DNA of 64,000 nt, taken from positions 124,001 through 188,000 of the forward strand of contig NIVC01001406.1 of assembly GCA_002269645.1 (NCBI GenBank). Direction: 5' to 3'. Source of the DNA: Macrostomum lignano. Its lineage: Eukaryota. Within the stretch, counting starts at the first letter, position 1, and each line of letters starts with the position of its first letter. The position numbers and the translations under genes are program-made. The notes below the pieces were generated by a model. That model was not told the DNA's origin and searched no databases. It was given only the letters and a program-made list of their open reading frames with translations. Below, piece after piece: positions 13,157-64,000 of the stretch.

Positions 13157-13180
13157 CTTCCGGTATACAAGGACTGAAAG

Positions 13181-14278
13181 TCAAGCTGTGGTCCCGCTAA
13201 GATCGGCAGAGGCCCGCTTGAAGTAGGCGATAAGCCTGGCCAGGCCGGCACGGTAGTTCTCATCTGTGCCGCCGCCTGCATCTGTGGAAGTGGCTTCATC
13301 GCCGCTGACTTTTTCTGACGACGTATCGGCTCGGCACCGGTGCACGTGAGCGAAATCGACAGCTCGGACCACTACAGCGAAACCGGAGCAGTCAGAATCT
13401 TCCTGCGGCTGCTGCACAGGCGCCGCCTCGTAGGCGATGAGCAGCGAGCTGGCGTAGAACCGGAAGGACCGCTGCACAGCGAACCAGGCGTCCAGCTGCT
13501 CCAGTCTGGCGGCCACTGCGGAGGCCACGGCGCCGGCTCGGCCGGGAGACCCAGCCGCGGCCAGGAACGGCAGGAAGCCCTTGCTGTACACGGCCTCAGC
13601 ATCCAGGGAGCGGCCGTGCAAGATGGAGTAGACTCGAGGCTCCGATCGGCCTATCAGCGGCACCCGGAAGCCCGTGATGACGAAGCCCAGCTGGCCTCGG
13701 TGCGAGTACATCGCCCGCTGCAGCAGCCGCTTGGAGGCCGGGGCGCCCGGCGGTGCTGACAGGCCGCCCATCTTGCAGTCCATCACGCACGGTCTGCGAA
13801 GGTGCTTCAAGGCGTCGCCGAGTCCCAGGTACAGCTGCCCGCCTCCCTGCCGACATCTGTACAGCCCGAGGAAGTCAGCAAGGAACGGCCGCAGTCCCTC
13901 CAACACTGGCGAGTCGGCATCGCTGCCGGCGGCGGCCGCCGCTCGATAGAAGGCCACCTCGCGAGGTCCCTTTGGCGGCCGCTGCACCGGCTTGTACAGA
14001 TCGCCGGACTGGCCGGACAGAATCGGCGACTTTCGCCAGAACAGCAGGCCCTTGCCGCCCACCTGGTGCGAGTACTCGGTCAGGCCTGCTGGCAGGTCCT
14101 GCACCTCCGGCTGCTGCCGCTTCTGCTGTTCGTCATCCTCTTGGACATCAAAAACTGCCGTCGTCTCCGCCAGCTCCCGCTGCTGACTGTTCTCGCAGCA
14201 GCCGCTGCTGGCGGCCTTCCACCGGGTAGCAATGGGGACGGCGCTGCTGGCGGACGCAGCCGGTTGAATGGCAACGGT
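13181..14278 (-). CDS. IPMK: Inositol polyphosphate multikinase (IPK superfamily); catalytic domain in a single exon; true start on an unresolved upstream exon
   Basis: Motifs in order: HQVGG, REVAFY, PCVMDCKMG (PxxxDxKxG), GFVITGFRV, FYASSLLIAYE (SSLL), VDFAH (IDF). Frame is open without a Met up to a stop near 14297. Candidate acceptor TTTCCTCAACAG| at 14279 (phase 0). An IP6K-type assignment is not excluded. Confidence 0.85.
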   Translation of the reverse strand, partial: TVAIQPAASASSAVPIATRWKAASSGCCENSQQRELAETTAVFDVQEDDEQQKRQQPEVQDLPAGLTEYSHQVGGKGLLFWRKSPILSGQSGDLYKPVQRPPKGPREVAFYRAAAAAGSDADSPVLEGLRPFLADFLGLYRCRQGGGQLYLGLGDALKHLRRPCVMDCKMGGLSAPPGAPASKRLLQRAMYSHRGQLGFVITGFRVPLIGRSEPRVYSILHGRSLDAEAVYSKGFLPFLAAAGSPGRAGAVASAVAARLEQLDAWFAVQRSFRFYASSLLIAYEAAPVQQPQEDSDCSGFAVVVRAVDFAHVHRCRADTSSEKVSGDEATSTDAGGGTDENYRAGLARLIAYFKRASADLSGTTA

Positions 14279-28345: not shown

Positions 28346-29399
28346 GTTAGGTAGATTGATAAACTGATAAATTCGGTGCCCTGAAAATACTGCGAGTCTC
28401 TGCGCGCATCCCCATCTATATTTAAAACTCTTCAAATGGAGTTCAGAAAGTCCAAGCAGAGGTACAAAATTAGATCAAGAAGGGCTTAAGCAGCCGCATC
28501 AGCTGCACACGAACATCCGGGATTCTCAAAAAGATAAATCCAATCCAGCTACTGATAGCCACCATCTGCTTGCCTCTCTCTCACCAGATGCGAGTGCCAA
28601 CTCAAGATGATGGATAGAAGCTGACAGGTGATAAACAGGCTCTTGTTTCTTCAGAACAAAACTTTCTTAGAAGTTTTTGTTAGAAACAGCTCACAGAAAG
28701 TGCAAAACTGAAGGGGACATGCATACCCCCTAGCCAGAAACTTATTTTTTCACTCTCTTTATTCCATCCCTATTCCATCATTTATACGCCAAAAAGCCAC
28801 CTGTCGAAAATCCCACACAGCCAGATGACGAATAAGGAGACCGGAGCCTCTCCTGTCAAATCCTGGGATAAAATCGCGGCAGAAAAGGACTTTACACACT
28901 GTACTTGATTCTGACTGGACTGGGATTCGCAAGCACAGATGCTGGATTGTAGGGCGGGGACAGTGATGAAGGAGGCAGCTGGAGATTTGCCGGTTGGAGA
29001 GGGATGGTAAAAGGGATTCCGTAGCCTAGTGGTCCAGCGCGGCGCTTGAGAACCAACCCCAAGGCACAGTGAAGTGTACATACCTAGCGATAAATAAAGT
29101 TAGGGCCGCTGTACACTCCTGTGTGAGTGTGTGCCTGTGCGTATGACTGCGTACGTATCCGCGCGCTTGTGTGCCTGCTCAGGGGAGTCGGCGAAATGGG
29201 CAGCAATGCCTCTCGCCGGTAGTGCGACAATGTCGCTTAAAGTGCGCCCAGGTGCCCCCTGCCTCAAAAAAGAGGGTTGGTTGAAGAGACTGAAGGGCGC
29301 AAGAAGGTAATGAAGGGCGCCAGAAGGAACCAAAAGGCGAAGAAAGATAAAATAACTTTAGTAAGGAAAAGATGGAACATCAGTGAGAGATGGAGACAG

Positions 29400-41083
<11,684 letters not shown>

Positions 41084-48321: not shown

Positions 48322-48819
48322 CTGTTTTATATGCACCAAAATATTCGGTCAGCCTAGCGACTTGACGCAGCTCCGGGTGATTTTTTAATTACATTTGACG
48401 GACGCAGTCACAAAGTCAAATTGACTTTCGGCCATAGACTGCGGGTACCATGCAGTAGCGGCTTTTGTTTATTCCATAATTTAGAAACTTAATTAAAAAT
48501 TACACGAATCGAAGTATACTTTTTTTGCGTACGACAAAAGCTCGCGCTTTTCCTGGACATTGAGGAGGCCTTCGACAATATGATCTTCGAGGCCTTTGGC
48601 AGAGCCCTTGAAATCCAGGGCCACCCAGCCTCTCCTTGTCCTTACCCCTGTTCTTTGGAACATGGTCATGAATTAGTCGTTTTGTAGGGATTTTCATGAC
48701 CTCATTTATAGTGGGCTATGCAGCGTTGAGCAAACGAATGTGGCCTCAGGCTCTCAGAGTCGCAAACCACAGCGGTTATGTTTTCCAAAAAACTGCTCTG
48801 GAAATGTGACATTTCTATG

Positions 48820-49420
48820 GAGAAGCAGGTCTGCTGCCTGGGCCTCACTCTAGACCACAGCCTTAACTGGACCCCCCACATCCAAGCTGAAGCTAAAAAA
48901 GCCCTGGCGGTCCACCTGGGAGCTCACCCCCAGGAAGCTGTGGTGGATTTACACTGCCATCATCCGCCCTTCGATCAGTTACGCCAGCCTCGTGTGGGCT
49001 AGCGGTCTGGGCGTCAAGGGCAACCTCTACGCTCTCTACAAAATCCAGGGCAGAGCCTGCCGCATGACTATGGAAGATCCACCCTCTGCTGGAGGCATGA
49101 TCCTCCTCTGGATATTTGTATCAAAGTAGAGGGGGCGAAGAGCACCCGGCGCCTTCTGGATGCTGGGGGTGGCCTTTAAAAAGGTGCGGGCCTTTAAGAA
49201 GCGGTCGCTTATCCCGCACTCCGACCTCTGCCTCAAGACTCTCGAGGAGTGCGGCGGGCTCAACATCCTCACGGACTCGATTCAAGCCACCCTTCTCCTG
49301 AGACAGAGGGATAAGGTCACTATTCAGCCTCGACACGAGGCGAGTGACAGCTGGAGCGATTCCGAAGTCAACTGTTACACTGACGGCTCTATGAGGCATT
49401 GGTCTCTCAAGCTTCGGAGC
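48820..49420 (+). mobile_element. Degenerate non-LTR retrotransposon (I/LOA/R1-like): RT thumb through RNase H start, frameshifted
   Basis: LGLTLDHSLNWTPHI; WIYTAIIRPSISYASLVW; YKIQGRACR; VNCYTDGS (RNase H first motif). Confidence 0.75.
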
Positions 49421-50372
49421 TTGCGTCCTTATCAAGAGAGAAGCGGTGTGAAGCTACTCCAAGCATACTGGACTCAACTTTGCAACTGGCAACGAGTGCG
49501 TTGACCTGCTGGTCAAGGCTGGCTCCGCACAGGGGCCCCTATCCTCGCCTCGGTGATGAACTCCCGCGTTAAGCGCTGAGCTGACTCCAAGCATCTCCGC
49601 TGGTGGCACGACCACTCGAAATTGCAGGAAATCCCGCGCTGCCGTCCCCTGCCTTCCCATCTCATGCGTAGAGCCCTCCTTAGGCTCCACTGCAGCGACC
49701 TCAGAGCAGTCAGCATGGCCCTCTCCGGCATGGCTGCTTCTATCGCCATCGCTTTCTTCAGGGCCAGGTACCTGAGGAGCGGTGCCCCTTCTGTCGCTCA
49801 GGCAGTGAAAGCGCCGAGCACTTTATCTGCCACTGCCCGGTCTTCACCAGGGCCAGGCTCACTCACTCGTTCCAATCCCGGTTCTCTTCGAGAGCATATA
49901 CCTGTAACACCTGGTGAAACGTCTGGCTAGCTGAACATCCAGGATATTGGACATCCAACAGTTTAAAAAAAGAACGTTTCAGTCCCAGAAAAGATTTCTT
50001 GGAATTACCTCGTAGTATTTCGCGTGGAGGCAAGTTAACTACAAACGCGCTCTGTATGCTGTAGTAAGCTGGGTAGAACTCTATGCTATTGTTGGGGCAG
50101 AAAGTGACAGACAGCCTAAAAAAAGAAACAATAAAATTAAGAAGCCAGACCCACCAACTCCATTTAACTGCTATTTATAGCACAGGGCTGTACAGTCACT
50201 GAGCACCACGGGCTCATTGCCTCATTCTGCGGGTAGACAGTAGCGGCCATCGTGGAAATCCCAAGCATTTTTGAAACAGAAGTTCTAAGGTTTTTTATTC
50301 TGCAATTATAAAAGCGTAAAAGAAAAATTGACAAACGCTCAGACACTCGAACCACAAACTTCGGATACAAAA

Positions 50373-51137
50373 ATGCATCTCAGCCAGGTGATTCTCCTGT
50401 GCCCGCTGCTGCTGCTGCTCACCAGCGCCCAGTCACCGCCCGGGCCCCGCCGGCTGCTCCGCTGTCCCGCCGAGTTTGCCGCTCTCGTTGAGCCGCTGCC
50501 CGACAATCCGGACGTGCAGCCGGTGCTCACGACCGGCCCCGGTGTCCGGCTGCAGACTGTCGGGTTTCTGCGGGACTCCGAGCTGAAGCTGGACTCGGAC
50601 GGCCGACTGTGGCTGAGCAGCAGGTTGGCTGGCAACCGCTTCAGCGGGCCGCACGTTCTGTTGTGCTCCGACACCGAGCGCCGCGGCCTCATCACCTTCT
50701 CGCTGTTCGTCAGACTGGCGCCGCCGGACCTCACCGAGGTCAACACTCCAGACGCCCTTCCTGAAGCAACCGTGACATCCGCTGCTCCGTCTGCAGCCAC
50801 CAAGACCTCCGCTGCTCCGTCTGCAACTACCAAGACCTCTGCTGCTACGTCTACAGCTGTCAAGGCATCAGGCGCTCCGGAGAGGCTCGCCGCAGCTCCC
50901 GCCTCCGCCGCCAACGGAGCCGTCAGCCACATCGACGACCCGCTGTTCTGCGCTCTCGCCGCTGCCGTCCTGTTGCTCCTCGCAATCTGCGTCGCTCTCG
51001 CCGTCACCCTCGTAGTCGCCCTTCGCCGACGTCGCTGCACCCAGCGCGGTCTGAAGGGCCCGATCTTCGTCTCCAACCTGGGGTGCAGCGCCGAGCCGCT
51101 GTTTCAGCAGAGCGAGGAGGTCAAGATGGAAGTTTGA
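50373..51137 (+). CDS. Paralog P1 (254 aa): signal peptide, two-Cys ~90-aa ectodomain, Ser/Thr/Ala stalk, one TM helix, short tail ending MEV
   Basis: Intronless ORF, ATG at 50373, TATAAAAG ~65 nt upstream, obvious similarity to three other ORFs in the window. Confidence 0.85.
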   Translation: MHLSQVILLCPLLLLLTSAQSPPGPRRLLRCPAEFAALVEPLPDNPDVQPVLTTGPGVRLQTVGFLRDSELKLDSDGRLWLSSRLAGNRFSGPHVLLCSDTERRGLITFSLFVRLAPPDLTEVNTPDALPEATVTSAAPSAATKTSAAPSATTKTSAATSTAVKASGAPERLAAAPASAANGAVSHIDDPLFCALAAAVLLLLAICVALAVTLVVALRRRRCTQRGLKGPIFVSNLGCSAEPLFQQSEEVKMEV

Positions 51138-51438
51138 AAAGCAGATTAAGAACCTTTTCGAACTGGGAAAATGATGCTTAATCTGTCATTCTTTGCAGAT
51201 ATTTTTACTCGAAAGACAATATGGTACATGTATTCTTTTTTGGATGAATTGAACTTTTTCACTGCATATTCTCTCCAGCTTTATCCTGAATCTCATAAAC
51301 ACTTAGCTGTCTGTCTGAATATGTTTTTCCATTATGAATACAAGAATAATTTAATTGATTGTTATCAAATAATGAAGACATTGTTATTCAGTAAACATGT
51401 GCTAAACTTTCACAACTGAGTAAATAAATTTTACTAAA

Positions 51439-53641
51439 TGATGTAACCACGCTCTGGTCGCGGGATAGGGCATGGGAACTTTTTCGAAAGTGCCTCCTAT
51501 CCCGTGCACCCTCTGCACAGAGCTGTCGAGACTCGGCCAGGTCTCCGACCGGGCCTGGAGACTCCCGCTCTGCTGCACCCCTCCTGCTGCCTTGGTCCCG
51601 TCTCTCCTGCCGCCACACCTGCCTTTCCGGAGCCCCCTACCCCTTTCTGTACCTCCCCTCTACCCTATCTCTTCTGTTTCCGCCCTATTCTTCCTGTACT
51701 TTCCCTTTCCCCCCTCTTTTTATCTCTCTCTGCACTTTTTTTTCCTGCGCTGTCCCTCCTTCTCTGTGTCTACTTACAGTATTTTGTGTGCTCACCGTCT
51801 CCCCATCCCCTCCCAAACTCCCAAACGGTGACGCAAGTCGTGTGACCCCTTCTTCCCCCGATGACTCATCGATGACTCATCCCCCTCTCTTGCGCAACCT
51901 TTTCTCATGCTATTGTTCTCCTCCCCAAATTTCTCATGCGACACCCACCCCACCTCCGCTTCTATTGTTCTCGTTTTTGATTCTTTTGTTCTCTCGACCC
52001 CCACCAATTATCACATTTTCTCCGATTTTCTCTTTCTTTTGTTCTCGTTTTCGCACCTAATTATCACCTTTTCTCCAATGTTTACTTTTCCATTGTTCTC
52101 AGTTTTCCCCAATTATCCCCGATTTCCAATTCCTTTGTTCTCGACCCCAGCCCTATTGTTCTCAATGTTTGCTTGCGCAACACTTTCGCGACCTCCCGCT
52201 GCGCCAATTATCCCCCACCCCACCTCCGGATTGCGCAATTTCCCTATTTCTCATGTTGCTATGCCGGTCTCATGCTTCTCATCATGACTCATTCTGACGT
52301 CATTCTGCCGGCAGCCAATCAGAGAGAGGGAGCCATGGTAACGACATTGAGGAGGCGGCTGTGAGGTCTATAAAAGGAAGCGATTTCGGCATGAGAATCC
52401 TCAACTTTTCCTCTCCTCGTCCTTCTTTGGACTTGCCGTCAGATTGAGTTCTGACCCATTCGTCTATAAGACGAGTCCCTGCCGGTCCGCGGTCTGTTAC
52501 CGCCAAGTTATCCTTAGCTCCCCAAGTGAGCTCGCCTATCGGCCAGCGGTCTGACACCGCCCAGCATCATCAGCATCGCCTGATCCACATCAGCGCCTCG
52601 TCGCTCCAGCGCATCGCCGCTTCACCGTCTGCCTGATTGCAGCCTACAGCCGCCACCGGTCACTCCGCCTCTCTCTCTCTCTGTGCAGCTGCCGGTAAGT
52701 TCCTGTTACTAATTTGTGCTCTAATTGCCTTTGCTTATCCGGGGTTTGCCTATTTTCCATTGTCTGATTAGAGAGCTGAGCCAATTGTGATACCGTATCT
52801 TTTGCTGTATTTTACTCAATAGTGAAGCCGCCTAATTGCCTGATTATTTGCCTAAGGGCCTAATTATTAACTATTAACTAACTTCATCATTATTCAATCT
52901 TTCACCATCATTTCACTCATGGCTTGCTAAGCCTTTCTCCCGGGGTGGCAAAGCATAAGGAAGTTTGGGTAAGCTAATGGCCTCTCCCCGTGCAAAGCCC
53001 GCCTGTGAGTGCGTGCTGCGGGGCCGCGTGTGCGTGCAGTAGAGGGATTAGCGAGTCTTGGCACAGAATGGCAGCAGGAAGGTTGCAACCCCATGCTAAC
53101 GCGTCCCTTCGCCCTGAGCAATCTAAACTGTAGACAGTACATGTTCGCCTCATACTACTCTTAGTAATCAAAGTCGCAAGTCAGTCTCGCTCACAGCCAC
53201 AAAGGATCCCCTGCTGAGAAATCCTCCAGGATTGAGCCCAGAGTTCCCGATCATGCCCCAAGCAGAGTCCCTGTACTCGGCTGCATGCGTCTCCCCTGTT
53301 AGCCTAAATCCCCTGGTAACCAATCCAGGCGGGGCTCTAGCCTCGAGAGGTCTGGTAGAAAGATCCAGGTGCGCCAGGTCACATAGAGTGGTGGCAGCCA
53401 CTCGGTCATACCATGACCGAGTGACCAACTATTGCACCTTGGCTACAGGTGGGGTCCATGTGGGTCCTTGGCCCTCTGGTCACGAAGCGCTACCAAAGCT
53501 ACTAATCATGTGGGCGGGACAGTCTGGTGCTGGAGGTCCGTCAGGTCATTGCCCGGTCATAGGCAGCCTACGGTCATTGCCCCCTCTAGCCATGCGTTCG
53601 TCTCTCTACGGAGCGGACAGGCGACAAGGGCGGTTACATCA
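51439..53641 (+). mobile_element. 2203-bp TG...CA element with terminal inverted repeats and a 4-bp target duplication; probable solo LTR
   Basis: Starts TGATGTAACC, ends GGTTACATCA; TAAA at both 51435-51438 and 53642-53645; internal TATA promoter; no intact ORF. Confidence 0.7.
51862..52376 (+). promoter_or_regulatory. Pol II promoter/enhancer inside the element
   Basis: AP-1 TGACTCA at 51862, 51873, 52285; C/EBP TTGCGCAA at 51890, 52173, 52231; CRE TGACGTCA at 52295; AGCCAATCAG ~52313; TATAAAAG at 52369; downstream donor CCG|GTAAGT at 52695. Confidence 0.7.
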
Positions 53642-53797
53642 TAAATTCGTTATGCAATTCGAGTCATTGGTGCAAAATGGTAAACAGATTATTAACAGTC
53701 TTGATGCGGTATATTGTTCGGTTCCCATGAATCAATAACAAAAAGCGCAGATTTGTTTAAACATTGTCAAGGAGTTAGAAAAAAACCGCAAAGAATG

Positions 53798-54448
53798 TCA
53801 GACATCCGTGACCTCGTGAAACTCCCCTAGCGACTTGCCCAGCAGCTGCTGGTGCCCGCTCTTCAGACCTGTGGGCGGCACGAATATTTTCTTTTGCTTG
53901 TATTGCCAGCAGCAGGTTCGCCTTGTTGACACCACCACGAGAGCAGCGGTGAGGCAGAGGCAGGCCAATAGGAGCAGCAGTGCAGTTCCAGCCAGGACCA
54001 GTTCCCGCGGTCTGAGTCCACCGATGTCCTCAGCAGCAGCTTCTGAACTGTTATGCGGTGCCGTTGTCACAGGATTTGCCAGCGACTCTGTCCTCAGGCG
54101 GATGTACAGCACGAAGCTGACAGTTTTCCGGTCGTTTTGGCACTCCAGATGGTGCGGCCCGCTGAAGCGGCTGCCGGCCGACCTGCTGGAGGCGCCAACG
54201 TTCAGCCACAGTCGGCCGGCCGAGTCCAGCCGCAGTTCGGAGTCGCGCAAGAACCGGACAGTCTGCAGCCGGACACCGGGGCCGGTCGTGAGCACCGGCT
54301 GCAGGTTCGGATCGTCGGGCAGCGGCTCAACGAGGGCGGCGAACTCGGCGGGACATCGGAGCAGCCGGTGGGGCCCGGGCGGTGGCTGGGCAGCCGCTGC
54401 CGTTACGCAGAGCAGCAGTGCAGCGAGAAGGATTCCAGCAAAGTTCAT
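53798..54448 (-). CDS. Paralog P2 (216 aa): same architecture with a divergent stalk, TM and tail, ending TDV
   Basis: Intronless ORF; shares LLRCPAEFAALVEPLPD..QPVLTTGPGVRLQTVRFLRDSELRLDSAGRLWL. Confidence 0.85.
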   Translation of the reverse strand: MNFAGILLAALLLCVTAAAAQPPPGPHRLLRCPAEFAALVEPLPDDPNLQPVLTTGPGVRLQTVRFLRDSELRLDSAGRLWLNVGASSRSAGSRFSGPHHLECQNDRKTVSFVLYIRLRTESLANPVTTAPHNSSEAAAEDIGGLRPRELVLAGTALLLLLACLCLTAALVVVSTRRTCCWQYKQKKIFVPPTGLKSGHQQLLGKSLGEFHEVTDV

Positions 54449-55004
54449 TTCAGAGTCTGTAGAGGCTAGCGCAGATTTACTAGAGAGCTGAGCTCAATGT
54501 TCTCAAAGCTCTCGCACAGCTTTAAATAGTGCTCGCGGCGGACCCGAGGGCAGAGCGGCGTGAATAGATGAATAAGCAAATTAGCCTCTGCATAACCCAT
54601 GGTTTCAACCCCTCTCACGGGTTTCTCTGGGTAGCCCGACTGCCCCTTGCCATTGTCAGTTGAGCAGGCTGAGTCCAGTGTATATCTAGAGCTCATTTGT
54701 GGCTCAGTGGGAGGGAGGGTGGTTCTTGTTGGCATCCGCATGACCCATCCAAAAATAGGCTCACTGCGGCTATATCTGACGACTGGACTGCCCACACGGA
54801 ACACAAAAAACTAGTTTTTTTTAACGCGGATTTTCTATTTACATCGAAGATTTTTATTACTTTGTCGGCAAATGCAGACTGTCCATTGCGGAAGCAGTGC
54901 TCTAGGAAGCTAAAAAAAGGCACCAAAAACTGTAAAATTACTTAATTTATGTATTTTATGAGTTTTGGACACCTTAGACTTAGTAGTAAGTAGCTTTTTT
55001 CAGG

Positions 55005-56535
55005 CTGGACAACCGCCCCCCCTCAGATTCTCAGGCTGGGCCACCGCCTCCCCCTCAGATTCTCAGGCTGGGCCACCGCCTCCCCCTCAGATTCTCAGGC
55101 TGGGCCACCGCCTCCCCCTCAGATTCTCAGGCTGGGCCACCGCCACCGCCCCCCCTCAGATTCTCAGGCTGGGCCACCGCCCCCCCCTCAGATTCTCAGG
55201 CTGTGCCACCGCCCCCCCCTCAGATTCTCAGGCTGTGCCACCGCCTCCCCCCTCAGATTCTCAGGCTGGGCCACCGCCCCCCCCCTCAGATTCTCAGGCT
55301 GGGCCACCGCCCCCCCCTCAGATTCTCAGGCTGTGCCACCGCCTCCCCCCTCAGATTCTCAGGCTGGGCCACCGCCACCGCCCCCCCCTCAGATTCTCAG
55401 GCTGTGCCACCGCCCCCCCCCTCAGATTCTCAGGCTGGGCCACCGCCTCCCCCCTCAGATTCTCAGGCTGGGCCACCGCCTCCCCCCCCTCAGATTCTCA
55501 GGCTGGCCACCGCCACCGGCCCCCCCTCAGATTCTCAGGCTGGGCCACCGCCCCCCCTCAGATTCTCAGGCTGGCCACCGCCCCCCCTCAGATTCTCAGG
55601 CTGGGCCACCGCTCCCCCTCAGATTCTCAGGCTGGCCACCGCCCCCTCAGATTCTCAGGCTGGCCACCGCCCCCCTCAGATTCTCAGGCTGGCCACCGCC
55701 CCCCCCCTCAGATTCTCAGGCTGGCCACCGCCCCCCCCCCTCAGATTCTCAGGCTGGCCACCGCCCCCCCCTCAGATTCTCAGGCTGGGCCACCGCCTTC
55801 CCCCTCAGATTCCCAGGCTGGCCACCGCCCCCCCCCTCAGATTCTCAGGCTGGGCCACCGCCCCCCCTCAGATTCTCAGGCTGGGCCACCGCCCCCCCTC
55901 AGATTCTCAGGCTGGCCACCGCCCCCTCAGATTCTCAGGCTGGGCCACCGCCCCCCCTCAGATTCTCAGGCTGGCCACCGCCCCCCTCAGATTCTCAGGC
56001 TGGCCACCGCCCCCCCTCAGATTCTCAGGCTGGGCCACCGCCCCCCCTCAGATTCTCAGGCTGGCCACCGCCCCCCCTCAGATTCTCAGGCTGGGCCACC
56101 GCCTTCCCCCTCAGATTCCCAGGCTGGCCACCGCCCCCCCCTCAGATTCTCAGGCTGGGCCACCGCCCCCTCAGATTCTCAGGCTGGGCCACCGCCCCCC
56201 CCTCAGATTCTCAGGCTGGCCACCGCCCCCCTCAGATTCTCAGGCTGGGCCACCGCCCCCCCTCAGATTCTCAGGCTGGCCACCGCCCCCCTCAGATTCT
56301 CAGGCTGGGCCACCGCCCCCACCCTCAGATTCTCAGGCTGGCCACCGCCCCTCCCCCTCAGATTCTCAGGCTGGCCACCGCCCCCCCTCAGATTCTCAGG
56401 CTGGGCCACCGCCCCCCTCAGATTCCCAGGCTGGCCACCGCCCCCCTCAGATTCCCAGGCTGGCCACCGCCCCCCCTCCCAGGCTGGCCATCAGATTCTC
56501 AGGCTGGGCCACCGCCCCCCTCAGATTCTCAGGCT
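55005..56535. repeat. ~30-bp satellite with a variable C-tract (CTCAGATTCTCAGGCTGGGCCACCGCCCCCC)
   Basis: Directly visible; explains ORFs between 54965 and 56673. Confidence 0.95.
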
Positions 56536-56696
56536 GAGAAAGAAACTACACGAAAGCAGAAACTTCACGCTCTATCTATGTTTGACAGTTTGTTGTATTG
56601 TGGCAAAAAATTAAAAAAAAGCTACAAAATTCATCAAAGGATAAAACGAAAAAGTCAGTACAGGTGTGGGTAAGAATTTGAATGCAGTGGATCTAC

Positions 56697-57272
56697 GAGC
56701 TCAGCAGGTGTTCAAGCCAGATGTTCAGCAGGTGTTCAAGCCAGATGCTCAGCAGGTGTTCAAGCCAGATGCTCAGCAGGTGTTCGAGCCAGATGTTCAG
56801 CAGGTGTTCGAGCCAGATGTTCAGCAGGTGTTCAAGCCAGATGCTCAGCAGGTGTTCGAGCCAGATGTTCAGCAGGTGTTCGAGCCAGATGTTCAGCAGG
56901 TGTTCAAGCCAGAAGCTCAGCAGGTGTTCAAGCCAGATGCTCAGCAGGTCTTCAAGCCAGATGCTCAGCAGGTGTTCGGGCCAGATGCTCAGCAGGTATT
57001 CAGGCCAGATGCTCAGCAGGTGTTCAAGCCAGATGCTCAGCAGGTATTCAGGCCAGATGCTCAGCAGGTGTTCGAGCCAGATGTTCAGCAGGTGTTCAAG
57101 CCAGATTTTCAGCAGGTGTTCAAGCCAGATGTTCAGCAGGTGTTCGAGCCAGATGCTCAGCAGGTCTTCGAGCCAGATGCTCAGCAGGTCTTTGAGCCAG
57201 ATTCTCAGCAGGTGTTCAAGCCAGATGCTCAGCAGGTGTTCAAGCCAGATGCTCAGCAGGTGTTCGAGCCAG
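56697..57272 (+). repeat. 24-bp satellite (CAGCAGGTGTTCAAGCCAGATGCT), outer part of the left inverted arm
   Basis: About 24 units; reverse-complement array at 59130-59463. Confidence 0.95.
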
Positions 57273-57325
57273 ATGCGCCGGAGGCACCACTTCTAAAACA
57301 CAGCGTCTTCATTCTCTGACTTCCT

Positions 57326-57405
57326 GTTGCACTGGCGGGAGTCGAACCCGCGCCAGCTCGTTCGTTCTCAGGACGAGTTGCTCTACCGTTAAGCTACAGT
57401 GCAAC
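57326..57405 (-). ncRNA. tRNA-like Pol III unit, copy 1 (atypical anticodon arm)
   Basis: Exact reverse complement of 59001-59080. Confidence 0.7.
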
Positions 57406-57911
57406 CGGAACAGTCTGCTCTCAGCTGGACCGATTGAATCACAATTTATAGCCCAGCTTAGTTGGATAATTCCGGAGTCATGGAAAAGCCACGCCATCCT
57501 TTGTGAATTATTGAGCTAAAATTAGCGAGTATTTTAAGGAGGGCCGGCGGGGAAAGTCGCCTATTTTAAGCTCAAGCCGAATGTACAGTCGTAGAAGTAA
57601 TAAAATCGTCACAAGGAACTGGCGGCTCAAGTTGTGTTCACGACTTGCAGCGGCCACTTAGAGCTGCAGTCTATTTAGAGACAGTTTGTGTGCTAAAAAT
57701 AGCCGTTCCTTTAGCCCGGCTTCACTTGGAGATTGAATCTGTACTGCTGCAGCAGATGAATCATTTTTACAGGTATTACTTTTGAAAGACACAGAAAACA
57801 TTTCATTACTTAAAGTTATCTCTCTTTCAACTTTTTATTGTATTCAAAATTCTGAATCATTGAGCATATCTCTATGGTGTTAAATGACTTGTTACAGTAT
57901 ATCTCAGTATT

Positions 57912-58660
57912 GCTGAGGTGCCCTGACACAGGGGGAATGCTGAGGTGCCATGACACAGTGGGAATGCTGAGGTGCCATGACACAGGGGGAATGCTGAGGT
58001 GCCATCACACAGGGGGAATGCTGAGGTGCCATCACACAAGGGGAATGCTGAGGTGCCATGACACAGGGAGAATGCTGAGGTGCCATGACACAGGGGGAAT
58101 GCTGAGGTGCCATCACACAGGGAGAATGCTGAGGTACCATGACACAGGGGGAATGCTGAGGTGCCATGACACAGGGGGAATGCTGAGGTGCCATGACACA
58201 GTGGGAATGCTGAGGTGCCATGACACAGGGGGAATGCTGAGGTGCCATCACACAGGGGGATGCTGAGGTGCCATCACACAGGGAGAATGCTGAGGTACCA
58301 TGACACAGGGGGAATGCTGAGGTGCCATGACACAGGGGGAATGCTGAGGTGCCATGACACAGGGGGAATGCTGAGGTGCCATGACACAGGGAGAATGCTG
58401 AGGTGCCATGACACAGGGGGAATGCTGAGGTGCCATTATACAAGGGGAATTCTGAGGTGCCATGACACAGGGGGAATTCTGAGGTGCCATCACACAAGGG
58501 GAATTCTGAGGTGCCATGACACAGGGGGAATGCTGAGGTACCATAACACAGGGGGAATGCTGAGGTGCCATCACACAAGGGGAATGCTGAGGTACCATAA
58601 CACAGGGGGAATGCTGAGGTGCCATGACACACGGGGAATGCTGAGGTACAATGACACAGG
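57912..58660. repeat. 27-bp satellite (GCTGAGGTGCCATGACACAGGGGGAAT) filling the spacer of the inverted duplication
   Basis: Directly visible. Confidence 0.96.
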
Positions 58661-59000
58661 TCAACAGATTTAATCTCCAAGTGAAGCCGGGCCTAAGTGG
58701 CGGCTATTTTTAGCACACAAACTGTCTCTAAATAGACCGCAGCTCTGAGTGGCCGCTGCAAGTCGTGAACACAACTTGAGCCGCCAGTTCCTTGTGACGA
58801 TTTTATTACTTCTACGACTGTACATTCGGCTTGAGCTTAAAATAGGCGACTTTCCCCGCCGGCCCTCCTTAAAATACTCGCTAATTTTAGCTCAATAATT
58901 CACAAAGGATGGCGTGGCTTTTCCATGACTCCGGAATTATCCAACTAAGCTGGGCTATAAATTGTGATTCAATCGGTCCAGCTGAGAGCAGACTGTTCCG

Positions 59001-59080
59001 GTTGCACTGTAGCTTAACGGTAGAGCAACTCGTCCTGAGAACGAACGAGCTGGCGCGGGTTCGACTCCCGCCAGTGCAAC
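59001..59080 (+). ncRNA. tRNA-like Pol III unit, copy 2 (atypical anticodon arm)
   Basis: A box TAGCTTAACGG; B box GGTTCGACTCC; GTTGCACTG/CAGTGCAAC acceptor-type stem; D stem GCTT/GAGC; T stem GCGGG/CCCGC; TATAAAT at 58956; TTTT at 59108-59111. Confidence 0.7.
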
Positions 59081-59129
59081 AGGAAGTCAGAGAATGAAGA
59101 CGCTGTGTTTTAGAAGTGGTGCCTCCGGC

Positions 59130-59463
59130 GCATCTGGCTCGAACACCTGCTGAGCATCTGGCTTGAACACCTGCTGAGCATCTGGCTTGAACACCTGCTG
59201 AGAATCTGGCTCAAAGACCTGCTGAGCATCTGGCTCGAAGACCTGCTGAGCATCTGGCTCGAACACCTGCTGAACATCTGGCTCGAAGACCTACTGAGCA
59301 TCTGGCTCGAACACCTGCTGAACATCTGGCTTGAACACCCGCTGAACATCTGGCTCGAACACCTGCTGAACATCTGGCTTGAACACCCGCTGAACATCTG
59401 GCCTGAATACCTGCTGAGCATCTGGCTTGAACACCTACTGAACATCTGCCTCGAACGCCTGCC
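59130..59463 (-). repeat. 24-bp satellite, outer part of the right inverted arm
   Basis: About 14 units. Confidence 0.93.
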
Positions 59464-59921
59464 AAAATATACGGCTTGAATATCGAAAGTACTCAAATAG
59501 ATGATTCAATATTACTGACTTTATAAGTATATATTAATAACTATAGATAATTTGTATTCATACTCTTACCTACGCTTGTATTGACATTATTGTTTCATCC
59601 GTTGTTGACTGTTGCCATAAATTTAAAATTTACTGTCAAGCACCAATAGAGCGTGAAGTTTCTTGGTTACGTTGTTGACTTTTTGTCAGTTTACTTTTAT
59701 TACGTTTACTTTTACAACCATTATAAACTGCCTACTTGATAAAGGCATAGCTTGAGTCCCTAATTTCGACATACCCACCCGTCCATCAGATCTTGACGAT
59801 GCTTCAGATTTGGCAAACGATAAAAATTTCAGGTGCCTACCGACATCCACATCCCCCATACCCCTGTCTACCGCTAAGTACAATACTCCCCATTGCGACT
59901 GTGTAATGTTCGTACAACACC

Positions 59922-60446
59922 CAGGGGGAATGCTGAGGTGCCATGACACAGGGGGAATGCTGAGGTGCCATGACACAGGGGGAATGCTGAGGTGCCATCA
60001 CACAAGGGGAATTCTGAGGTGCCATGACACAGGGGGAATGCTGAGGTGCCATGACACAGGGGGATGCTGAGGTGCCCTGACACAGGGGGAATGCTGAGGT
60101 GCCATGACACAGGGGGAATGCTGAGGTGCCATGACACAGGGGGAATGCTGAGGTGCCATGACACAGGGGGAATGCTGAGGTGCCATGACACAGGGGGAAT
60201 GCTGAGGTGCCATGACACAGGGGGAATGCTGAGGTGCCATAACACAGGGGGAATGCTGAGGTGCCATGACACAGGGGGAATGCTGAGGTGCCATAACACA
60301 GGGGGAATTCTGAGGTGCCATGACACAGGGGGAATGCTGAGGTGCCATCACACAAGGGGAATGCTGAGGTGCCATGACACAGGGGGAATGCTGAGGTGCC
60401 ATCACACAAGGGGAATGCTGAGGTGCCATCACACAGGGGGAATGCT
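59922..60446. repeat. Second array of the 27-bp satellite, same orientation as 57912-58660
   Basis: Directly visible. Confidence 0.95.
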
Positions 60447-60881
60447 GATATCTGAGGCGCGAAAGCTTGTTTTCTGTGAAGGATATTTCTGTTTTATAAA
60501 AAACCAGCCATTCTGACTATGTAAGGATAGTATAATTTTTAAAAAGATTTTGTTAACCTCAACTTGTTGAATTGAATAACAAATCAATAAAAAGGCAAAA
60601 TCTTGATAATTATTGAATATTAGTTGTATATTTCGGAAATCGATCACACACTTGGGTATCAGTTAGGTACTGACAAAACATTTTTAGTGTATGGATTGGA
60701 AACGTGTAAGCTAATAAGAAGAATAATAATGTAATACATCAATGAGTCTGAATGATATTTCAGATGAATGAAATCATACTCGCAATAAGGAACGCCTGAA
60801 ACTCAAAGATATGTACAAGTTTGAGCCGTCAATGAAGCACTGAAAGAGACTAGGCAAAACTGTCATTAGTAACCATCGGAA

Positions 60882-61658
60882 TTAGACTTGATCGCGCTCG
60901 AGGATCACGACTTCATGCGAAGTTGGCTTGCTCTGCTGGAACAGCGGCTCGGCGCTGCCCTTGACGATCGGTTTGAAGATCGGGCCCTTCAGACCTCGCT
61001 GGGTGGTGCGACGGTGGCTGCGACGGCCGACGGCTAAAAGGGCGAAGGCGAGAGCGATGCAGATTGCGAGGAGCAACAGGACGGCAGCGGCGAGAGCGCA
61101 GAACAGCGGGTCGTCGATGCGGCTGACGGCTCGGTTGGCGGCGGAGGCGGGAGCTGCGGCGAGCCTCTCGGGAGCGGCTGATGCCTTGACAGCTGTAGAC
61201 GGAACAGCGGAGGTCTTAGTGGCTGCAGACGGAGCAGCTGATGTCGCGGTTGCTTCAGGCAGAGAGTCTGGAGTGTTGACCTCGGTGATGTCCGGTGCCA
61301 GTCTGACGAACAGCGAGAAGGTGGCGAGGCCGCGGCGCTCGGTGTCGGAGCACAGCAGCACGTGCGGCCCGCTGAAGCGATTGCCAGCCGACCTGCTGAA
61401 GTTGCCGCCGATCAGCCACAGTCGGCCGGCCGAGTCCAGCCTCAGTTTGGAGGCCCACATGAACCGGACAGTCTGTAGTCGGACACCGGGGCCGGTCGTG
61501 AGCACCGGCTGCACGTCCGGATTGTCGGGCAGCGGCTCCACGAGGGTGGAGAGCTCGGCTGGACAGCGGAGCAGCCGTCGGGGCCCAGGCGGTGACTGGG
61601 CGCTGGCGAGCAGCAGCAGCAGAGGCCAGAGTGCCAGCAGCTTGATGACGCTGAGCAT
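60882..61658 (-). CDS. Paralog P3 (258 aa): stalk, TM and tail closest to P1, ending DQV
   Basis: Intronless ORF; shares IDDPLFCALAAAVLLLLAIC and QRGLKGPIF...SAEPLFQQS with P1. Confidence 0.87.
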   Translation of the reverse strand: MLSVIKLLALWPLLLLLASAQSPPGPRRLLRCPAELSTLVEPLPDNPDVQPVLTTGPGVRLQTVRFMWASKLRLDSAGRLWLIGGNFSRSAGNRFSGPHVLLCSDTERRGLATFSLFVRLAPDITEVNTPDSLPEATATSAAPSAATKTSAVPSTAVKASAAPERLAAAPASAANRAVSRIDDPLFCALAAAVLLLLAICIALAFALLAVGRRSHRRTTQRGLKGPIFKPIVKGSAEPLFQQSKPTSHEVVILERDQV

Positions 61659-62453
61659 TATTTAAACTAACAGTTGAATAAAATATTCGTCAGAGTTCTT
61701 GCAGACCTGGCAGGGTGTATAAAATAGTGTCAGCTGCAGCGGGCCTCTATATACTTGTGGTTTGGAAGCTGGCACTACCCCGTAAATTCCAGCCCTTTAC
61801 CCGCGGGAAATCCAGCCGCGCTCATTGGCCACTACAAGCGGATGAATATCTTGCGTAAATCTAAAAATAGTAACAAATCTGTTCTAATTTCTGATGCAGA
61901 ACATGGAACGGACTGCTTATGTCACAACGGTTTGTTCCTAGCTCGTAGTAGCTAAACTAACGGTTGATGCAATTGACGTCAGAAAATTTTGTTTAACTTT
62001 CTAACTGTTAGTTACACTCTTACCTTTCAAAGCCTTTGAAATTACCTTTCATGTCTTCCCTTTCAAAGTCCCAAAGGCATTTAAAACCGCCATAATAATT
62101 CAATACTGAAAAGTCTAACAAACTCCTATCTCGTCAATGTGTTTTTTGCCTGAAAATTTTCATTAGCTTCCAAAAAAATCTTAATGAAATGCTAGGAACG
62201 TCCGATTGCTGAGAAACTTTCAATAATTTCGGCCTTACAAAAAAGCCAAACTGCTTGTATTTGCAATGTTTTGAACGGAATGCCAAGCCAAGTATATTTT
62301 ACAGAAATGATTCGTGAAGCAGTTACTTCCGGCATGTACAATTAAAATGACAATTCATTACGAAGTGCTACAAAGATGCGTCTATTATGTTGCATACAAA
62401 ATATTGTCAACGGCGATATAAATCGATCTTTTATCGATTCCGTGTCGCAGAAA

Positions 62454-63029
62454 TCAAACTGGCAGTTTCTGAGCTCTGCTCGCCGCCGCGGTGAAGTGTC
62501 GAAAGTCGCGGTAGGGCCGGGCGCTCTGGCTGCGAACTCGCCGATCCCGCAGTCCAGCCGCGCAGGCCAGGGCGGCCGTCAGGACGGCGGCGAGGACTCC
62601 GACTGCGGCCAGGGCAATTTTGGTGGTCTTGCCGTCAACTAAAAACCGGTCTGCTTGCAAAGGAGATGACGACAATGACAGGTCGCCCGGAGGCTGGTGG
62701 CTGACGAACAGCGAGAAGGTGGCGAGGCCGCGGTGCTGAGTGTCGGAGCACAGCACGAAGTGCGGCCCGCTGGAGGTGCCACCGCTCAGCCACAGTCGGC
62801 CGGCCGAGTCCAGCCGCAGCTTGGAGTCGCGCAGGAACCGGACAGTCTGCAGCCGGACACCAGGGCCGGTTGTGAGCACCGGCTGCACGTCTGGGTTGTC
62901 GGGCAGCGGCTTAACGAGGACGGCGAACTCGGCGGGACAGCGGAGCAGCCGTCGGGGCCCGGGCGGTGACTGGGCGCTGGTGAGCAGCAGCAGCAGTGAG
63001 CACAGGAAAATCACCTGGCTGAGATGCAT
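62454..63029 (-). CDS. Paralog P4 (191 aa): signal peptide closest to P1, short unrelated stalk, TM and tail, ending LPV
   Basis: Intronless ORF with the shared ectodomain and a hydrophobic IALAAVGVLAAVLTAALACAAGL segment followed by basic residues. Confidence 0.82.
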   Translation of the reverse strand: MHLSQVIFLCSLLLLLTSAQSPPGPRRLLRCPAEFAVLVKPLPDNPDVQPVLTTGPGVRLQTVRFLRDSKLRLDSAGRLWLSGGTSSGPHFVLCSDTQHRGLATFSLFVSHQPPGDLSLSSSPLQADRFLVDGKTTKIALAAVGVLAAVLTAALACAAGLRDRRVRSQSARPYRDFRHFTAAASRAQKLPV

Positions 63030-63407
63030 GCTGTCTACTTGCTACTGAAGTGGCTGAGGTTAAAGCTTTTTTACATTAAGCAGCTGCATTGCTTTTAAAG
63101 GCCACAGCAGAGTAGCAGAATTTCTACCCCGCCTCGACCCCAGCGGAGAGTTGTTTTCAAAAATATACCAGAGAAAACCCGCGGAAAACTCTCAAGCCAA
63201 TCTGAGGCAAGAAAACAAGGCACAAGGGTTTTGGTTTATTTTTAGTCCCCTGCGTCACCGCCAGCCAGCAGGTTAAGGCATGCAGAATTCAAGCATTTGT
63301 TTACAACAAATGCGTAAGAGGAGTGAAAATTTGACAGGCTGCTTATTTGTGAAGCATCTGTTCTATGTGAGATACTCGATCTTATTTTTGATTGTGGCCA
63401 GTTCATA

Positions 63408-63830
63408 GACTAATTACACTCTCGCTTGTGTAGGTCATACACTAATTACACTCTCGCTTGTGTAGGTCATACACTAATTACACTCTCGCTTGTGTAGGTC
63501 ATAGACTAATTACACTCACGCTTGTGTAGGTCATAGACTAATTACACTCTCGCTTGTGTAGGTCATAGACTAATTACACTCTCGCTTGTCTAGGTCATAG
63601 ACTAATTACAATCTTGCTTGTGTAGGTCATAGACTAATTACACTCTCGCTTGTCTAGGTCATAGACTAATTACACTCTCGCTTGTGTAGGTCATAGACTA
63701 ATTACACTCTCGCTTGTGTAGGTCATAGAATAATTACAATTTCAATTGTCTAGGTCATAGAGTAATTGTATTCTAGCTATTCTAGGTCATAGACTAATTG
63801 CATTCTCGCTTGTCTTGATCATAGACTAAT
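63408..63830. repeat. 32-bp repeat (GACTAATTACACTCTCGCTTGTGTAGGTCATA)
   Basis: About 13 units, decaying rightwards. Confidence 0.94.
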
Positions 63831-64000
63831 TACATCCTGCCGTGCCCGAGTCCTAGAATATATTTGCAGTGTTCTCTAACATTTTTCTGAAATTCTTACT
63901 TCAAAAAACAAGCGATAGCGGAAATTCTAATTAATGCAAAAAACTAAGGTCGTCACAAGATTCAAAGCAAAGCGCAAACGGGCTTTTCTGACGCAGCAAT

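What the first reader, a model, noticed from the sequence alone, without database searches (positions are those of the whole stretch)
50373..63029. Cluster of four intronless single-pass surface proteins sharing an unassigned two-Cys ectodomain (candidate recognition or adhesion family)
Seen: P1 (50373-51137 +), P2 (53798-54448 -), P3 (60882-61658 -) and P4 (62454-63029 -) each have a signal peptide, a ~90-aa domain (QSPPGPRRLLRCPAEF..LVEPLPDNPDVQPVLTTGPGVRLQTVRFLRDS.LRLDS.GRLWL...GPH.L.C...TFSLFV), a stalk of variable length, one TM helix with a basic stop-transfer and a short tail. Both ectodomain Cys are kept in all four. I do not recognise the family. Inference: LxLDxxGxLxL and the final TFSLFV strand suggest a cadherin/Ig-like beta-sandwich. 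Clustered, intronless, diversifying type I membrane genes are the layout of invertebrate allorecognition and immune or adhesion receptor families. This is the best candidate for an undescribed system here.
Basis: partly seen in the sequence, partly recalled or inferred. Interest (0 to 1): 0.82.

Follow-up and report, generated by a model that had tools for sequence, protein, structure and literature searches.

The report
Orphan flatworm membrane-protein gene cluster
Four neighbouring single-exon genes of the flatworm Macrostomum lignano encode small single-pass membrane proteins that share a roughly 95-residue outer domain with no detectable relatives; the family is real, but its fold and function are unknown and nothing found here points to allorecognition or immunity.

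Summary
Four intact ORFs lie at the stated coordinates. Each has a signal peptide, a 93-101 aa two-Cys head, a variable stalk, one TM helix, a basic stop-transfer and a short tail.

The window is Macrostomum lignano contig NIVC01001406.1. Two other contigs carry the same cluster, consistent with the known redundancy of this assembly. P2, P3 and P4 already exist in GenBank as 'hypothetical proteins' derived from RNA-seq-based gene models. P1 is unannotated.

A profile of the head was scored against 1.84 billion representative proteins and recovered only these M. lignano genes. Pfam, PDB sequences, two AlphaFold runs (pLDDT 45 and 40) and Foldseek assign no fold, so the cadherin/Ig idea is untested rather than supported.

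Copy-to-copy comparison gives dN/dS 0.36 (p=5e-5), which indicates constraint.

The unexpected result is that paralog homology lies strictly inside the coding sequence. The head has dS of about 0.15-0.25 in every pair. The flanks, and the stalk/TM/tail of P2 and P4, are unalignable. This fits gene conversion or module shuffling that keeps one head on different anchors, which is the opposite of a diversifying recognition domain.

The most likely reading is a lineage-restricted family of membrane glycoproteins with a shared binding head. Interest is moderate to low.

The parts
50373..51137 (+). P1: 254-aa type I membrane protein (signal peptide 1-18, head 19-115, Ser/Thr/Ala/Pro stalk 116 to about 187, TM about 188-216, RRRRC stop-transfer, tail ending -KMEV). 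Not annotated in GenBank.
   Evidence: ORF; architecture; intact in a second genomic copy (L003 19335-18541, 264 aa) with dN/dS 0.29; exact sequence absent from the protein collection
53798..54448 (-). P2: 216-aa paralog and the most divergent one. Its signal peptide, stalk, TM and tail are not alignable to the others. Juxtamembrane CC; tail ends -EVTDV.
   Evidence: annotated as a 227-aa 5'-partial model P0003 on NIVC01001406.1
60882..61658 (-). P3: 258-aa paralog, homologous to P1 over nearly the whole CDS. This is gene Mlig007760 (the 95%-identical copy in L001 is PAA80334.1). Tail ends -RDQV.
62454..63029 (-). P4: 191-aa paralog. It shares only the signal peptide and head with P1; its short stalk, TM and tail are unrelated. 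This is gene Mlig010170 (the copy in L001 is PAA80333.1). Tail ends -KLPV.
50427..50717 (+). Head domain of P1 (97 aa, Cys13 and Cys80 of the mature chain). GC3 0.87.
54095..54391 (-). Head domain of P2 (99 aa). This is the only part of P2 with DNA similarity to the other genes.
61299..61601 (-). Head domain of P3 (101 aa; one N-F-S sequon).
62697..62975 (-). Head domain of P4 (93 aa; the variable loop is 8 aa shorter).
50774..50857 (+). 30-nt tandem repeat (2.8 copies) encoding the 10-aa stalk unit SAAPSAATKT. The L003 copy of P1 has one more unit, so stalk length varies by repeat number.
50307..50312 (+). TATAAA, 66 nt upstream of the P1 ATG (candidate core promoter).
   Evidence: consensus match only
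54521..54526 (-). TTTAAA, 78 nt upstream of the P2 ATG. The 5'-partial transcript-based CDS model begins 33 nt upstream of the ATG.
61748..61753 (-). TATATA, 95 nt upstream of the P3 ATG.
63094..63099 (-). TTTAAA, 70 nt upstream of the P4 ATG.

Best explanation
These are four paralogous genes with single-exon coding sequences, probably separately promoted, belonging to a family so far seen only in Macrostomum lignano. They encode small type I membrane glycoproteins. Shown here: the ORFs, the architecture, the copy number, the restriction to this species in the databases searched, purifying selection, and homology limited to the CDS. Inferred working: the signal peptide is cut after a conserved Ala (A|Q). 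A 93-101-aa beta-rich head, probably held by one disulfide between its two invariant Cys, sits on a flexible Ser/Thr/Ala/Pro stalk that is probably O-glycosylated. Stalk length differs between paralogs, and between copies through a 30-nt repeat. A TM helix with an Arg-rich stop-transfer anchors the protein (with juxtamembrane Cys in P1 and P2), and a 25-45-aa tail always ends in Val, which could be a PDZ-ligand or ER-export type signal. The head-coding segment is kept alike in all four genes by gene conversion, or was recently shuffled onto unrelated stalk/TM/tail modules. The four proteins would therefore present the same binding module, most likely for one common extracellular partner, at different distances from the membrane and with different cytoplasmic connections. 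The partner and the tissue are unknown.
For: ORFs and domain conservation. Topology features. Organism and annotation. The GenBank models are RNA-seq derived, with names clustered at 95% identity (PMC5730564). Restriction: a profile search of 1.84e9 representatives finds only the M. lignano proteins at E<=1e-16, and the remaining five hits (E 2e-8 to 7e-4) are NHL/RCC1/Reg_prop propeller proteins matched over 23-48 residues. Constraint: the four copy pairs pooled give Sd 33, Nd 31, dN/dS 0.36, p=5e-5. ORFs are intact in 9 of the 10 copies recovered on three contigs; the exception is a 1-nt deletion in an otherwise identical copy. All indels are multiples of 3. CDS-internal homology: blastn matches are P1-P3 50397-51116, P1-P4 50373-50713, and the head only for P2. 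No flank similarity over 600 nt on each side at word size 7, whereas the duplicated loci align straight through intergenic DNA at 96.5%. Head dS is 0.14-0.25 in all pairs, against >1 or unalignable for the TM+tail of P2 and P4. The C-terminal halves are not similar by BLASTP (E=0.68, and none). Head GC3 is 0.85-0.87 against 0.63-0.71 for the rest, as GC-biased conversion would give. Both AlphaFold runs place four beta strands in the C-terminal half of the head.
Against: There is no expression, localisation or binding data. P1 has no transcript model. The fold is unknown (pLDDT 40-45), and the disulfide, glycosylation and role of the terminal Val are all inferences. dN/dS cannot by itself tell the sense frame from the antisense frame whose third positions coincide with it (omega 0.40, p=2e-4). 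Gene conversion and module shuffling cannot be separated with these data. Absence from other Macrostomum species is not established, because their genomes and transcriptomes may not be in the protein collections searched. dN/dS in the last third of the head is about 1 or higher for P2 against the others (1.4-2.1, not significant), so part of the head may be relaxed or diversifying.
Confidence: 0.6

Rival explanations
1. Allorecognition or immune-type receptor cluster: polymorphic, diversifying ectodomains mediate self/non-self or pathogen recognition.
For: Clustered type I membrane genes with single-exon CDSs and a lineage-restricted head. Amino-acid differences between genomic copies are enriched in the 10 residues after the second Cys (5/40 against 25/879, post hoc p=0.008, mostly from one pair). 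omega is about 1-2 in the last third of the head for P2 against the others (not significant).
Against: There are only four members per locus, and none elsewhere in the searched protein space. The head is the most conserved, homogenised part: 76-87% identity and omega 0.27-0.66 over its first 63 codons. Copy-to-copy divergence is ordinary (dN 0.016). No ITIM/ITAM-like Tyr motifs are in the tails (the only tail Tyr are WQYKQK in P2 and RPYRDF in P4). No Ig or other known recognition domain was found. No population data exist.
Confidence: 0.06
2. Reproductive recognition proteins (sperm, egg or genital-tract surface), a class known to be lineage-restricted and fast-evolving in Macrostomum.
For: Orphan status and moderately high omega between paralogs (0.4-1.0 over the head). 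Rapid evolution of reproduction-related genes is reported for the genus (PMC7336406, abstract).
Against: The gene IDs Mlig010170 and Mlig007760 do not occur in the held supplementary tables of that paper or of four other M. lignano papers. This is weak evidence, because files may be truncated or use other IDs. There are no expression data either way.
Confidence: 0.15
3. Young orphan ORFs that are transcribed but have little or no function, with the membrane-protein look arising from composition.
For: No homologs anywhere, low AlphaFold confidence and low-complexity stalks. P1 is unannotated. One copy of P4 carries a frameshift.
Against: dN/dS is 0.36 with p=5e-5 between copies. Signal peptide, TM helix and terminal Val are kept even where the sequences are not homologous. 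Both Cys and 55 head positions are invariant. All indels are in frame.
Confidence: 0.12
4. The opposite strand is the coding one: long antisense ORFs overlap all four genes (50339-51076 -, 53835-54491 +, 60928-61665 +, 62740-63048 +).
For: The antisense ORFs are 102-245 codons long, all in the same relative frame, with omega 0.40.
Against: That frame shares third codon positions with the sense frame, so low omega and high GC3 are inherited automatically. Three of the four antisense ORFs have no ATG at their start (TTG). In P4 the antisense ORF ends with the head. Its products are Arg/Ser/Gly/Ala-rich with no recognisable features. The transcript-based GenBank models are on the sense strand. 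TATA-like boxes and purine -3 ATG contexts lie on the sense side.
Confidence: 0.03

Closest known systems
CD8-type architecture (one small disulfide-bonded head on an O-glycosylated stalk, TM, short tail)
   Same: Order and size of the modules: signal peptide, an approximately 100-aa head with two Cys 62-70 residues apart, a Ser/Thr/Pro/Ala-rich stalk, a single TM, juxtamembrane Cys and a short tail.
   Different: No Ig-family Pfam match even at E<=10, and no Trp 10-15 residues after the first Cys. This is an analogy of layout only, recalled from general knowledge; membership is not claimed.
Sialomucin-like small type I membrane proteins (the Pfam models TMEM154, FAM174/DUF1180 and Mucin-like glycoprotein gave the only weak hits)
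   Same: Low-complexity Ser/Thr/Ala/Pro stalk followed by a TM; weak sub-threshold matches cover exactly that region (E 0.04-1.2, 10-14 bits against cut-offs of 25-35).
   Different: The matches are compositional and below every curated cut-off. Those families lack the conserved two-Cys head that defines this one.
Invertebrate allorecognition clusters (Hydractinia Alr, Botryllus fuhc region)
   Same: Genomic clustering of lineage-restricted type I membrane genes.
   Different: Those systems have Ig-like or EGF ectodomains, many members or alleles, and hypervariable membrane-distal domains (general knowledge). Here there are four members, no known domain, and a homogenised membrane-distal head.
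Cadherin repeat
   Same: A hydrophobic-alternating 'xLxLDxxGxLxL' beta-hairpin and a terminal 'FSLFV' strand look superficially like cadherin strands.
   Different: No PF00028 match. No LDRE or DxNDNxPxF calcium-binding motifs (read directly). The ordered beta part is only about 60 residues.
Gene families under concerted evolution by partial gene conversion
   Same: Homology tracts are confined to part of the coding sequence, dS is uniformly low across all pairs in the tract, flanks are unrelated, and GC3 is raised in the tract.
   Different: Conversion was not demonstrated directly. Shuffling of a head module onto unrelated anchors would give the same picture.

Membership tests
Cadherin superfamily | Sequence match to the cadherin repeat profile (Pfam PF00028 and relatives) | tested here: not met
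   No cadherin family at E<=10 for the full proteins or the isolated heads
Cadherin superfamily | Ca2+-binding linker motifs (LDRE, DxD, DxNDNxPxF) and a repeat of about 110 aa | tested here: not met
   Motifs are absent on direct reading of alignment A2. The head is 93-101 aa, of which about 35 N-terminal residues are Pro-rich and predicted coil
Immunoglobulin superfamily | Match to Ig/I-set/V-set/C2-set profiles | tested here: not met
   No Ig-type Pfam hit at E<=10; no PDB sequence hit (best is a thioredoxin-like protein, E=1.3)
Immunoglobulin superfamily | Beta-sandwich fold with a B-F strand disulfide | tested here: inconclusive
   The two invariant Cys are 62-70 residues apart, which is compatible. 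However, the AlphaFold models have pLDDT 45 and 40, and Foldseek against the PDB gives nothing (best E 2.4, TM<=0.3)
Beta-propeller repeats (Reg_prop / NHL / RCC1) | Several tandem blades matching the repeat profile | tested here: not met
   A single 12-residue match to Reg_prop (E=0.19, 12.5 bits against a cut-off of 20.4). The propeller proteins found match only 23-48 residues of the profile
Allorecognition / immune receptor gene clusters | Many paralogs or alleles with a hypervariable distal ectodomain | tested here: not met
   Four paralogs, and no others among 1.84e9 representatives. The distal head is the most conserved part
Allorecognition / immune receptor gene clusters | High population polymorphism and positive selection | not testable with these tools
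   Only three assembly copies from one inbred line are available. Copy-to-copy dN/dS is 0.36, with a post hoc cluster of changes after Cys2
Type I membrane glycoprotein with mucin-like stalk (architectural class) | N-terminal signal peptide, one TM helix, positive-inside stop-transfer | tested here: met
   Hydropathy peaks and Arg clusters in all four (alignment). No dedicated signal-peptide predictor was available
Type I membrane glycoprotein with mucin-like stalk (architectural class) | Actual O-/N-glycosylation and surface exposure | not testable with these tools
   The stalk is Ser/Thr/Ala/Pro-rich. There is only one N-x-S/T sequon each in P2 and P3, and none in P1 or P4
Transposon- or virus-derived protein | Homology to transposon or viral proteins, or terminal repeats and many dispersed copies | tested here: not met
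   No Pfam hits. No hits outside the family in the exhaustive search. Exactly four copies in the window, with unrelated flanks. Genome-wide copy number was not testable

The most novel reading that the evidence does not exclude
The head is a new fold that serves as a Macrostomum-specific recognition module (gamete or self/non-self). Most of it is kept uniform across paralogs by gene conversion, while the loop after the second Cys and the indel-prone loop before it diversify. The different stalks and tails route one recognition event to different cellular outputs.
Probability: 0.07. Interest if true: 0.7.

Novelty: new variant of a known kind. Interest (0 to 1): 0.32.

Why it matters
If the reading is right, this is a compact example of a taxonomically restricted surface-protein family in a regenerating, transgenesis-ready flatworm model. 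One extracellular module is held constant across paralogs by recombination internal to the coding sequence, while the anchors diverge freely. That gives a tractable case for asking how orphan membrane proteins arise and acquire partners. It also flags an unannotated gene (P1) and a probably mis-annotated 80-aa fragment in the reference genome. It does not currently open a route to flatworm allorecognition or immunity.

Tried and rejected
1. Pfam on the full proteins and on the isolated heads at E<=10 gave only sub-threshold compositional hits (Rv1476, TMEM154, Stevor, Mucin, DUF1180, DUF7074) and one Reg_prop motif hit.

2. The PDB sequence profile search found nothing.

3. Two AlphaFold2 runs on 4- and 5-sequence alignments gave pLDDT 45.1 and 39.8, so they are unusable. 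Foldseek against the PDB on the better model gave best E 2.4 and is treated as meaningless.

4. The word-indexed protein searches returned very little. With P3 as query there were 3 hits. With the head profile the only hit was the frameshifted 80-aa model. With the P2 C-terminal half there were no hits, but that search did not even recover P2's own model, so it is uninformative.

5. The weak hits of the exhaustive profile search (P0005-P0009) are propeller-repeat proteins and were rejected as motif-level matches.

6. Searches for Mlig010170 and Mlig007760 in the full-text library and in the supplements of five M. lignano papers found nothing.

7. Retroposition as the origin of the intronless copies was rejected. 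Similarity stops inside the CDS, the UTR regions are unrelated, and no poly(A) remnants were seen.

8. Faster divergence of the unconstrained parts cannot explain the mosaic. Intergenic DNA between the duplicated loci diverges at about the synonymous rate (3.5% against dS 0.044). Flanks at dS of about 0.2 should therefore still align, and they do not.

9. dN/dS did not arbitrate between the strands, because the antisense frame that shares third positions also scores low.

10. The neighbouring ORFs (window 53232-53738 and 51907-52287; the upstream 430-aa ORF in L001) have no Pfam domains.


Full report
**1. The observation**

The four ORFs are at the stated coordinates and strands. Aligned, they share 53-80% identity to P1 overall and 76-87% over the head, P1 residues 19-115. 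There are 55 invariant head positions, including both Cys. Paralog tblastn E-values range from 1e-33 to 3e-93, and the window contains exactly four copies with no fragments.

Hydropathy shows one N-terminal hydrophobic stretch and one TM stretch in each protein, followed by an Arg-rich stop-transfer. Each ORF begins with ATG preceded by a purine at -3 and has in-frame stops upstream. A TATA-like hexamer lies 66-95 nt upstream of each ATG. The upstream regions of the paralogs are otherwise unrelated.

**2. Where it comes from**

[quoted passage not shown] The window is identical to part of contig NIVC01001406.1 of assembly GCA_002269645.1 (L002).

The whole four-gene cluster, in the same order and orientation, recurs on NIVC01000330.1 (L003):
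- P3 is 100% identical there.
- P4 is identical except for a 1-nt deletion, which produced the annotated 80-aa 'Mlig010170g2'.
- P2 is 97.7% identical.
- P1 is 264 aa, with one extra 10-aa stalk repeat.

The P4-P3 pair recurs on NIVC01000587.1 (L001) at about 96.5% DNA identity, running through the intergenic DNA. Such redundancy is expected. The sequenced DV1 line carries extra copies of the large chromosome, and the assembly has 180 Mb in blocks at least 95% identical (PMC5730564).

The GenBank annotation is derived from a genome-guided RNA-seq transcriptome with TransDecoder ORFs, and gene-name prefixes group transcripts at least 95% identical. P4 (Mlig010170), P3 (Mlig007760) and P2 (the 227-aa 5'-partial model P0003) therefore rest on transcripts. 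P1 is not annotated on either contig and is not in the protein collection. The CDS ranges of the models equal the ORFs, so the coding regions are single exons in a genome that averages 4.9 introns per gene.

**3. Is it coding, and on which strand?**

Comparing each gene with its copy on another contig gives, pooled, 33 synonymous and 31 nonsynonymous differences. That is dN/dS 0.36, with a binomial p of 5e-5 for synonymous excess. P1 alone gives 0.29. All indels between paralogs are multiples of three.

Long antisense ORFs overlap all four genes. They lie in the one antisense frame whose third positions coincide with the sense third positions. That frame inherits the low dN/dS (0.40) and the high GC3, so these statistics cannot choose the strand.

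The sense strand is favoured for the following reasons:
- The signal-peptide/TM/terminal-Val architecture persists even in the non-homologous C-terminal halves of P2 and P4.
- Three of the four antisense ORFs start at TTG.
- The antisense ORF of P4 stops at the end of the head.
- The transcript-based models, TATA-like boxes and ATG contexts are all on the sense side.

**4. What the head is**

No Pfam family matches, either for the full proteins or for the isolated heads, at E<=10. The only hits are sub-threshold compositional matches in the stalk/TM region and a 12-residue Reg_prop motif match. A profile search of PDB sequences finds nothing.

A HMMER profile of the head was scored against all 1.84 billion cluster representatives. 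It recovers only the M. lignano proteins at E<=1e-16. Five further hits (E 2e-8 to 7e-4) are NHL/RCC1/Reg_prop beta-propeller proteins matched over 23-48 residues, that is, the 'D-x-x-G-x-L-W-Φ' blade hairpin.

Two AlphaFold2 runs gave pLDDT 45.1 and 39.8. Both place a Pro-rich coil in the first 35 residues or so and four beta strands in the last 50 or so. Foldseek on the better model found nothing.

The head is therefore an unassigned, probably beta-rich, single-disulfide domain. The cadherin/Ig suggestion is neither confirmed nor excluded at the fold level, and it fails every sequence-level membership test.

**5. The unexpected part: homology confined to the coding sequence**

blastn of each gene with 1.5 kb of flank against the window shows paralog similarity only inside the ORFs:
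- P1-P3: 50397-51116 against 61631-60927 (84% identity).
- P1-P4: 50373-50713 against 63029-62701 (87% identity).
- P2: only about 250 nt of the head (86-88% identity).

A sensitive search (word size 7) of 600 nt on each side finds no flank similarity in any pair.

Synonymous divergence in the head is 0.14-0.25 for every pair. The signal peptide of P2, and the stalk/TM/tail of P2 and P4, are saturated or unalignable against P1/P3 (dS>1; BLASTP E=0.68 or no alignment).

Faster evolution of unconstrained parts cannot explain this. Between the duplicated loci, intergenic DNA diverges at about the synonymous rate (3.5% against dS 0.044). Flanks at dS of about 0.2 should therefore still be roughly 80% identical.

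Head GC3 (0.85-0.87) exceeds that of the rest of each gene (0.63-0.71), as GC-biased gene conversion would produce.

The data fit two scenarios. In one, an older family has had its heads (and, for P1/P3, nearly the whole CDS) homogenised by gene conversion. In the other, one head module was recently shuffled onto unrelated anchors. In either case the event predates the split of the assembly copies by about four- to five-fold in dS.

**6. Variation within the head**

The first 63 codons are under purifying selection (omega 0.27-0.66). The last 30 or so contain an indel-prone loop and the two final strands, with omega 0.5-2.1 (1.4-2.1 for P2 against the others, not significant).

Amino-acid differences between genomic copies are enriched in the ten residues after the second Cys (5/40 against 25/879, p=0.008). 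This test was chosen after seeing the data, and one pair dominates it. It is the only hint of a variable surface.

**7. Other sequence features**

These were read directly or taken.
- The conserved A|Q junction suggests the signal-peptide cleavage site.
- The stalks are Ser/Thr/Ala/Pro-rich. The P1 stalk contains a 30-nt tandem repeat whose copy number differs between assembly copies.
- N-glycosylation sequons are scarce: one each in P2 and P3.
- P1 and P2 have juxtamembrane Cys.
- The tails contain no ITIM/ITAM-like motifs.
- All four tails, and their copies on other contigs, end in Val (-MEV, -TDV, -DQV, -LPV), although the tails are otherwise dissimilar. From general knowledge, a C-terminal Val can act as a PDZ ligand or an ER-export signal. 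This is an inference.

**8. Interpretation**

The best-supported statement is that this is a lineage-restricted family of type I membrane glycoproteins, at least partly expressed. One binding head is kept uniform across four genes while stalk, anchor and tail differ. That predicts a common extracellular partner with paralog-specific reach or coupling.

The rivals are reproductive recognition, allorecognition/immunity, near-functionless young ORFs, and antisense coding. They are listed with their evidence in the Rival explanations section. None of them is favoured by the data, and allorecognition is disfavoured by the small family size and the homogenised head.

**9. Novelty and score**

The sequences of three members are already public as uncharacterised hypothetical proteins. 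The architecture is conventional. The head has no detectable relatives, and the CDS-limited homology is a modestly interesting evolutionary feature. Orphan genes are numerous in this genome.

I rate this 'new variant of a known kind' with interest about 0.3.

Noticed in passing
window 56944-57742 and 58664-59462: A 799-nt inverted repeat (96% complementary). Each arm carries a tRNA-Ser(UGA) gene (57326-57403 on -, 59003-59080 on +; Rfam 53.6 bits each) next to a 24-nt minisatellite. The arms flank a 27-nt minisatellite, and the whole structure lies between P2 and P3.
   Followed up: partly
window 55000-56476, 56699-57276, 57911-58660, 59130-59462, 59922-60448, 63403-63834: Large minisatellite arrays (periods 32, 24, 27, 24, 27 and 32 nt; 14-47 copies) fill most of the space between the genes and create long spurious ORFs in several frames. 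Array lengths differ strongly between the assembly copies.
   Followed up: partly
L003 10001-10243 (NIVC01000330.1): The annotated 80-aa protein Mlig010170g2 is P4 with a single-base deletion (GGCCCTGGTG to GGCCC-GGTG) in an otherwise 100% identical copy. It is either a long-read assembly indel or a very recent pseudogene.
   Followed up: yes
window 50373-54448 versus 60882-63029, compared with L003: Between the window contig and NIVC01000330.1, P3 and P4 are 100% identical at the nucleotide level (apart from the 1-nt deletion). P1 and P2 differ by about 2% plus a 30-nt indel. The two contigs are therefore a mosaic of identical and diverged segments, which could reflect recombination or loss of heterozygosity between chromosome copies, or an assembly collapse.
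   Followed up: no
window 50339-51076(-), 53835-54491(+), 60928-61665(+), 62740-63048(+): Long antisense ORFs overlap all four genes, all in the frame that shares third codon positions with the sense frame. They are interpreted as a by-product of GC3-rich codon usage.
   Followed up: yes
window 13181-14104 (-): A single ORF encoding an inositol polyphosphate kinase domain (Pfam IPK, E=2.5e-28), directly adjacent to a minisatellite at about 12573-13299.
   Followed up: partly
window 29277-29900 (+), continuing to about 31900: An exon-like ORF with a hormone-receptor domain (Pfam HRM, E=1e-12; the N-terminal domain of secretin-type GPCRs). It runs straight into about 2 kb of minisatellite that keeps the frame open.
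   Followed up: partly
window 48778-49504 (+): Short ORFs with motifs reminiscent of a degraded non-LTR retrotransposon ('LGLTLDHSLNWTPHI', 'CYTDGS'), just upstream of P1. There is no Pfam hit at E<=0.01, so this rests on memory only.
   Followed up: partly
window 2580-4391 (+): A 603-aa ORF with a long PQ-rich 'PPQPPKQQPL' tandem repeat and a unique C-terminal part. It has no Pfam domain.
   Followed up: no
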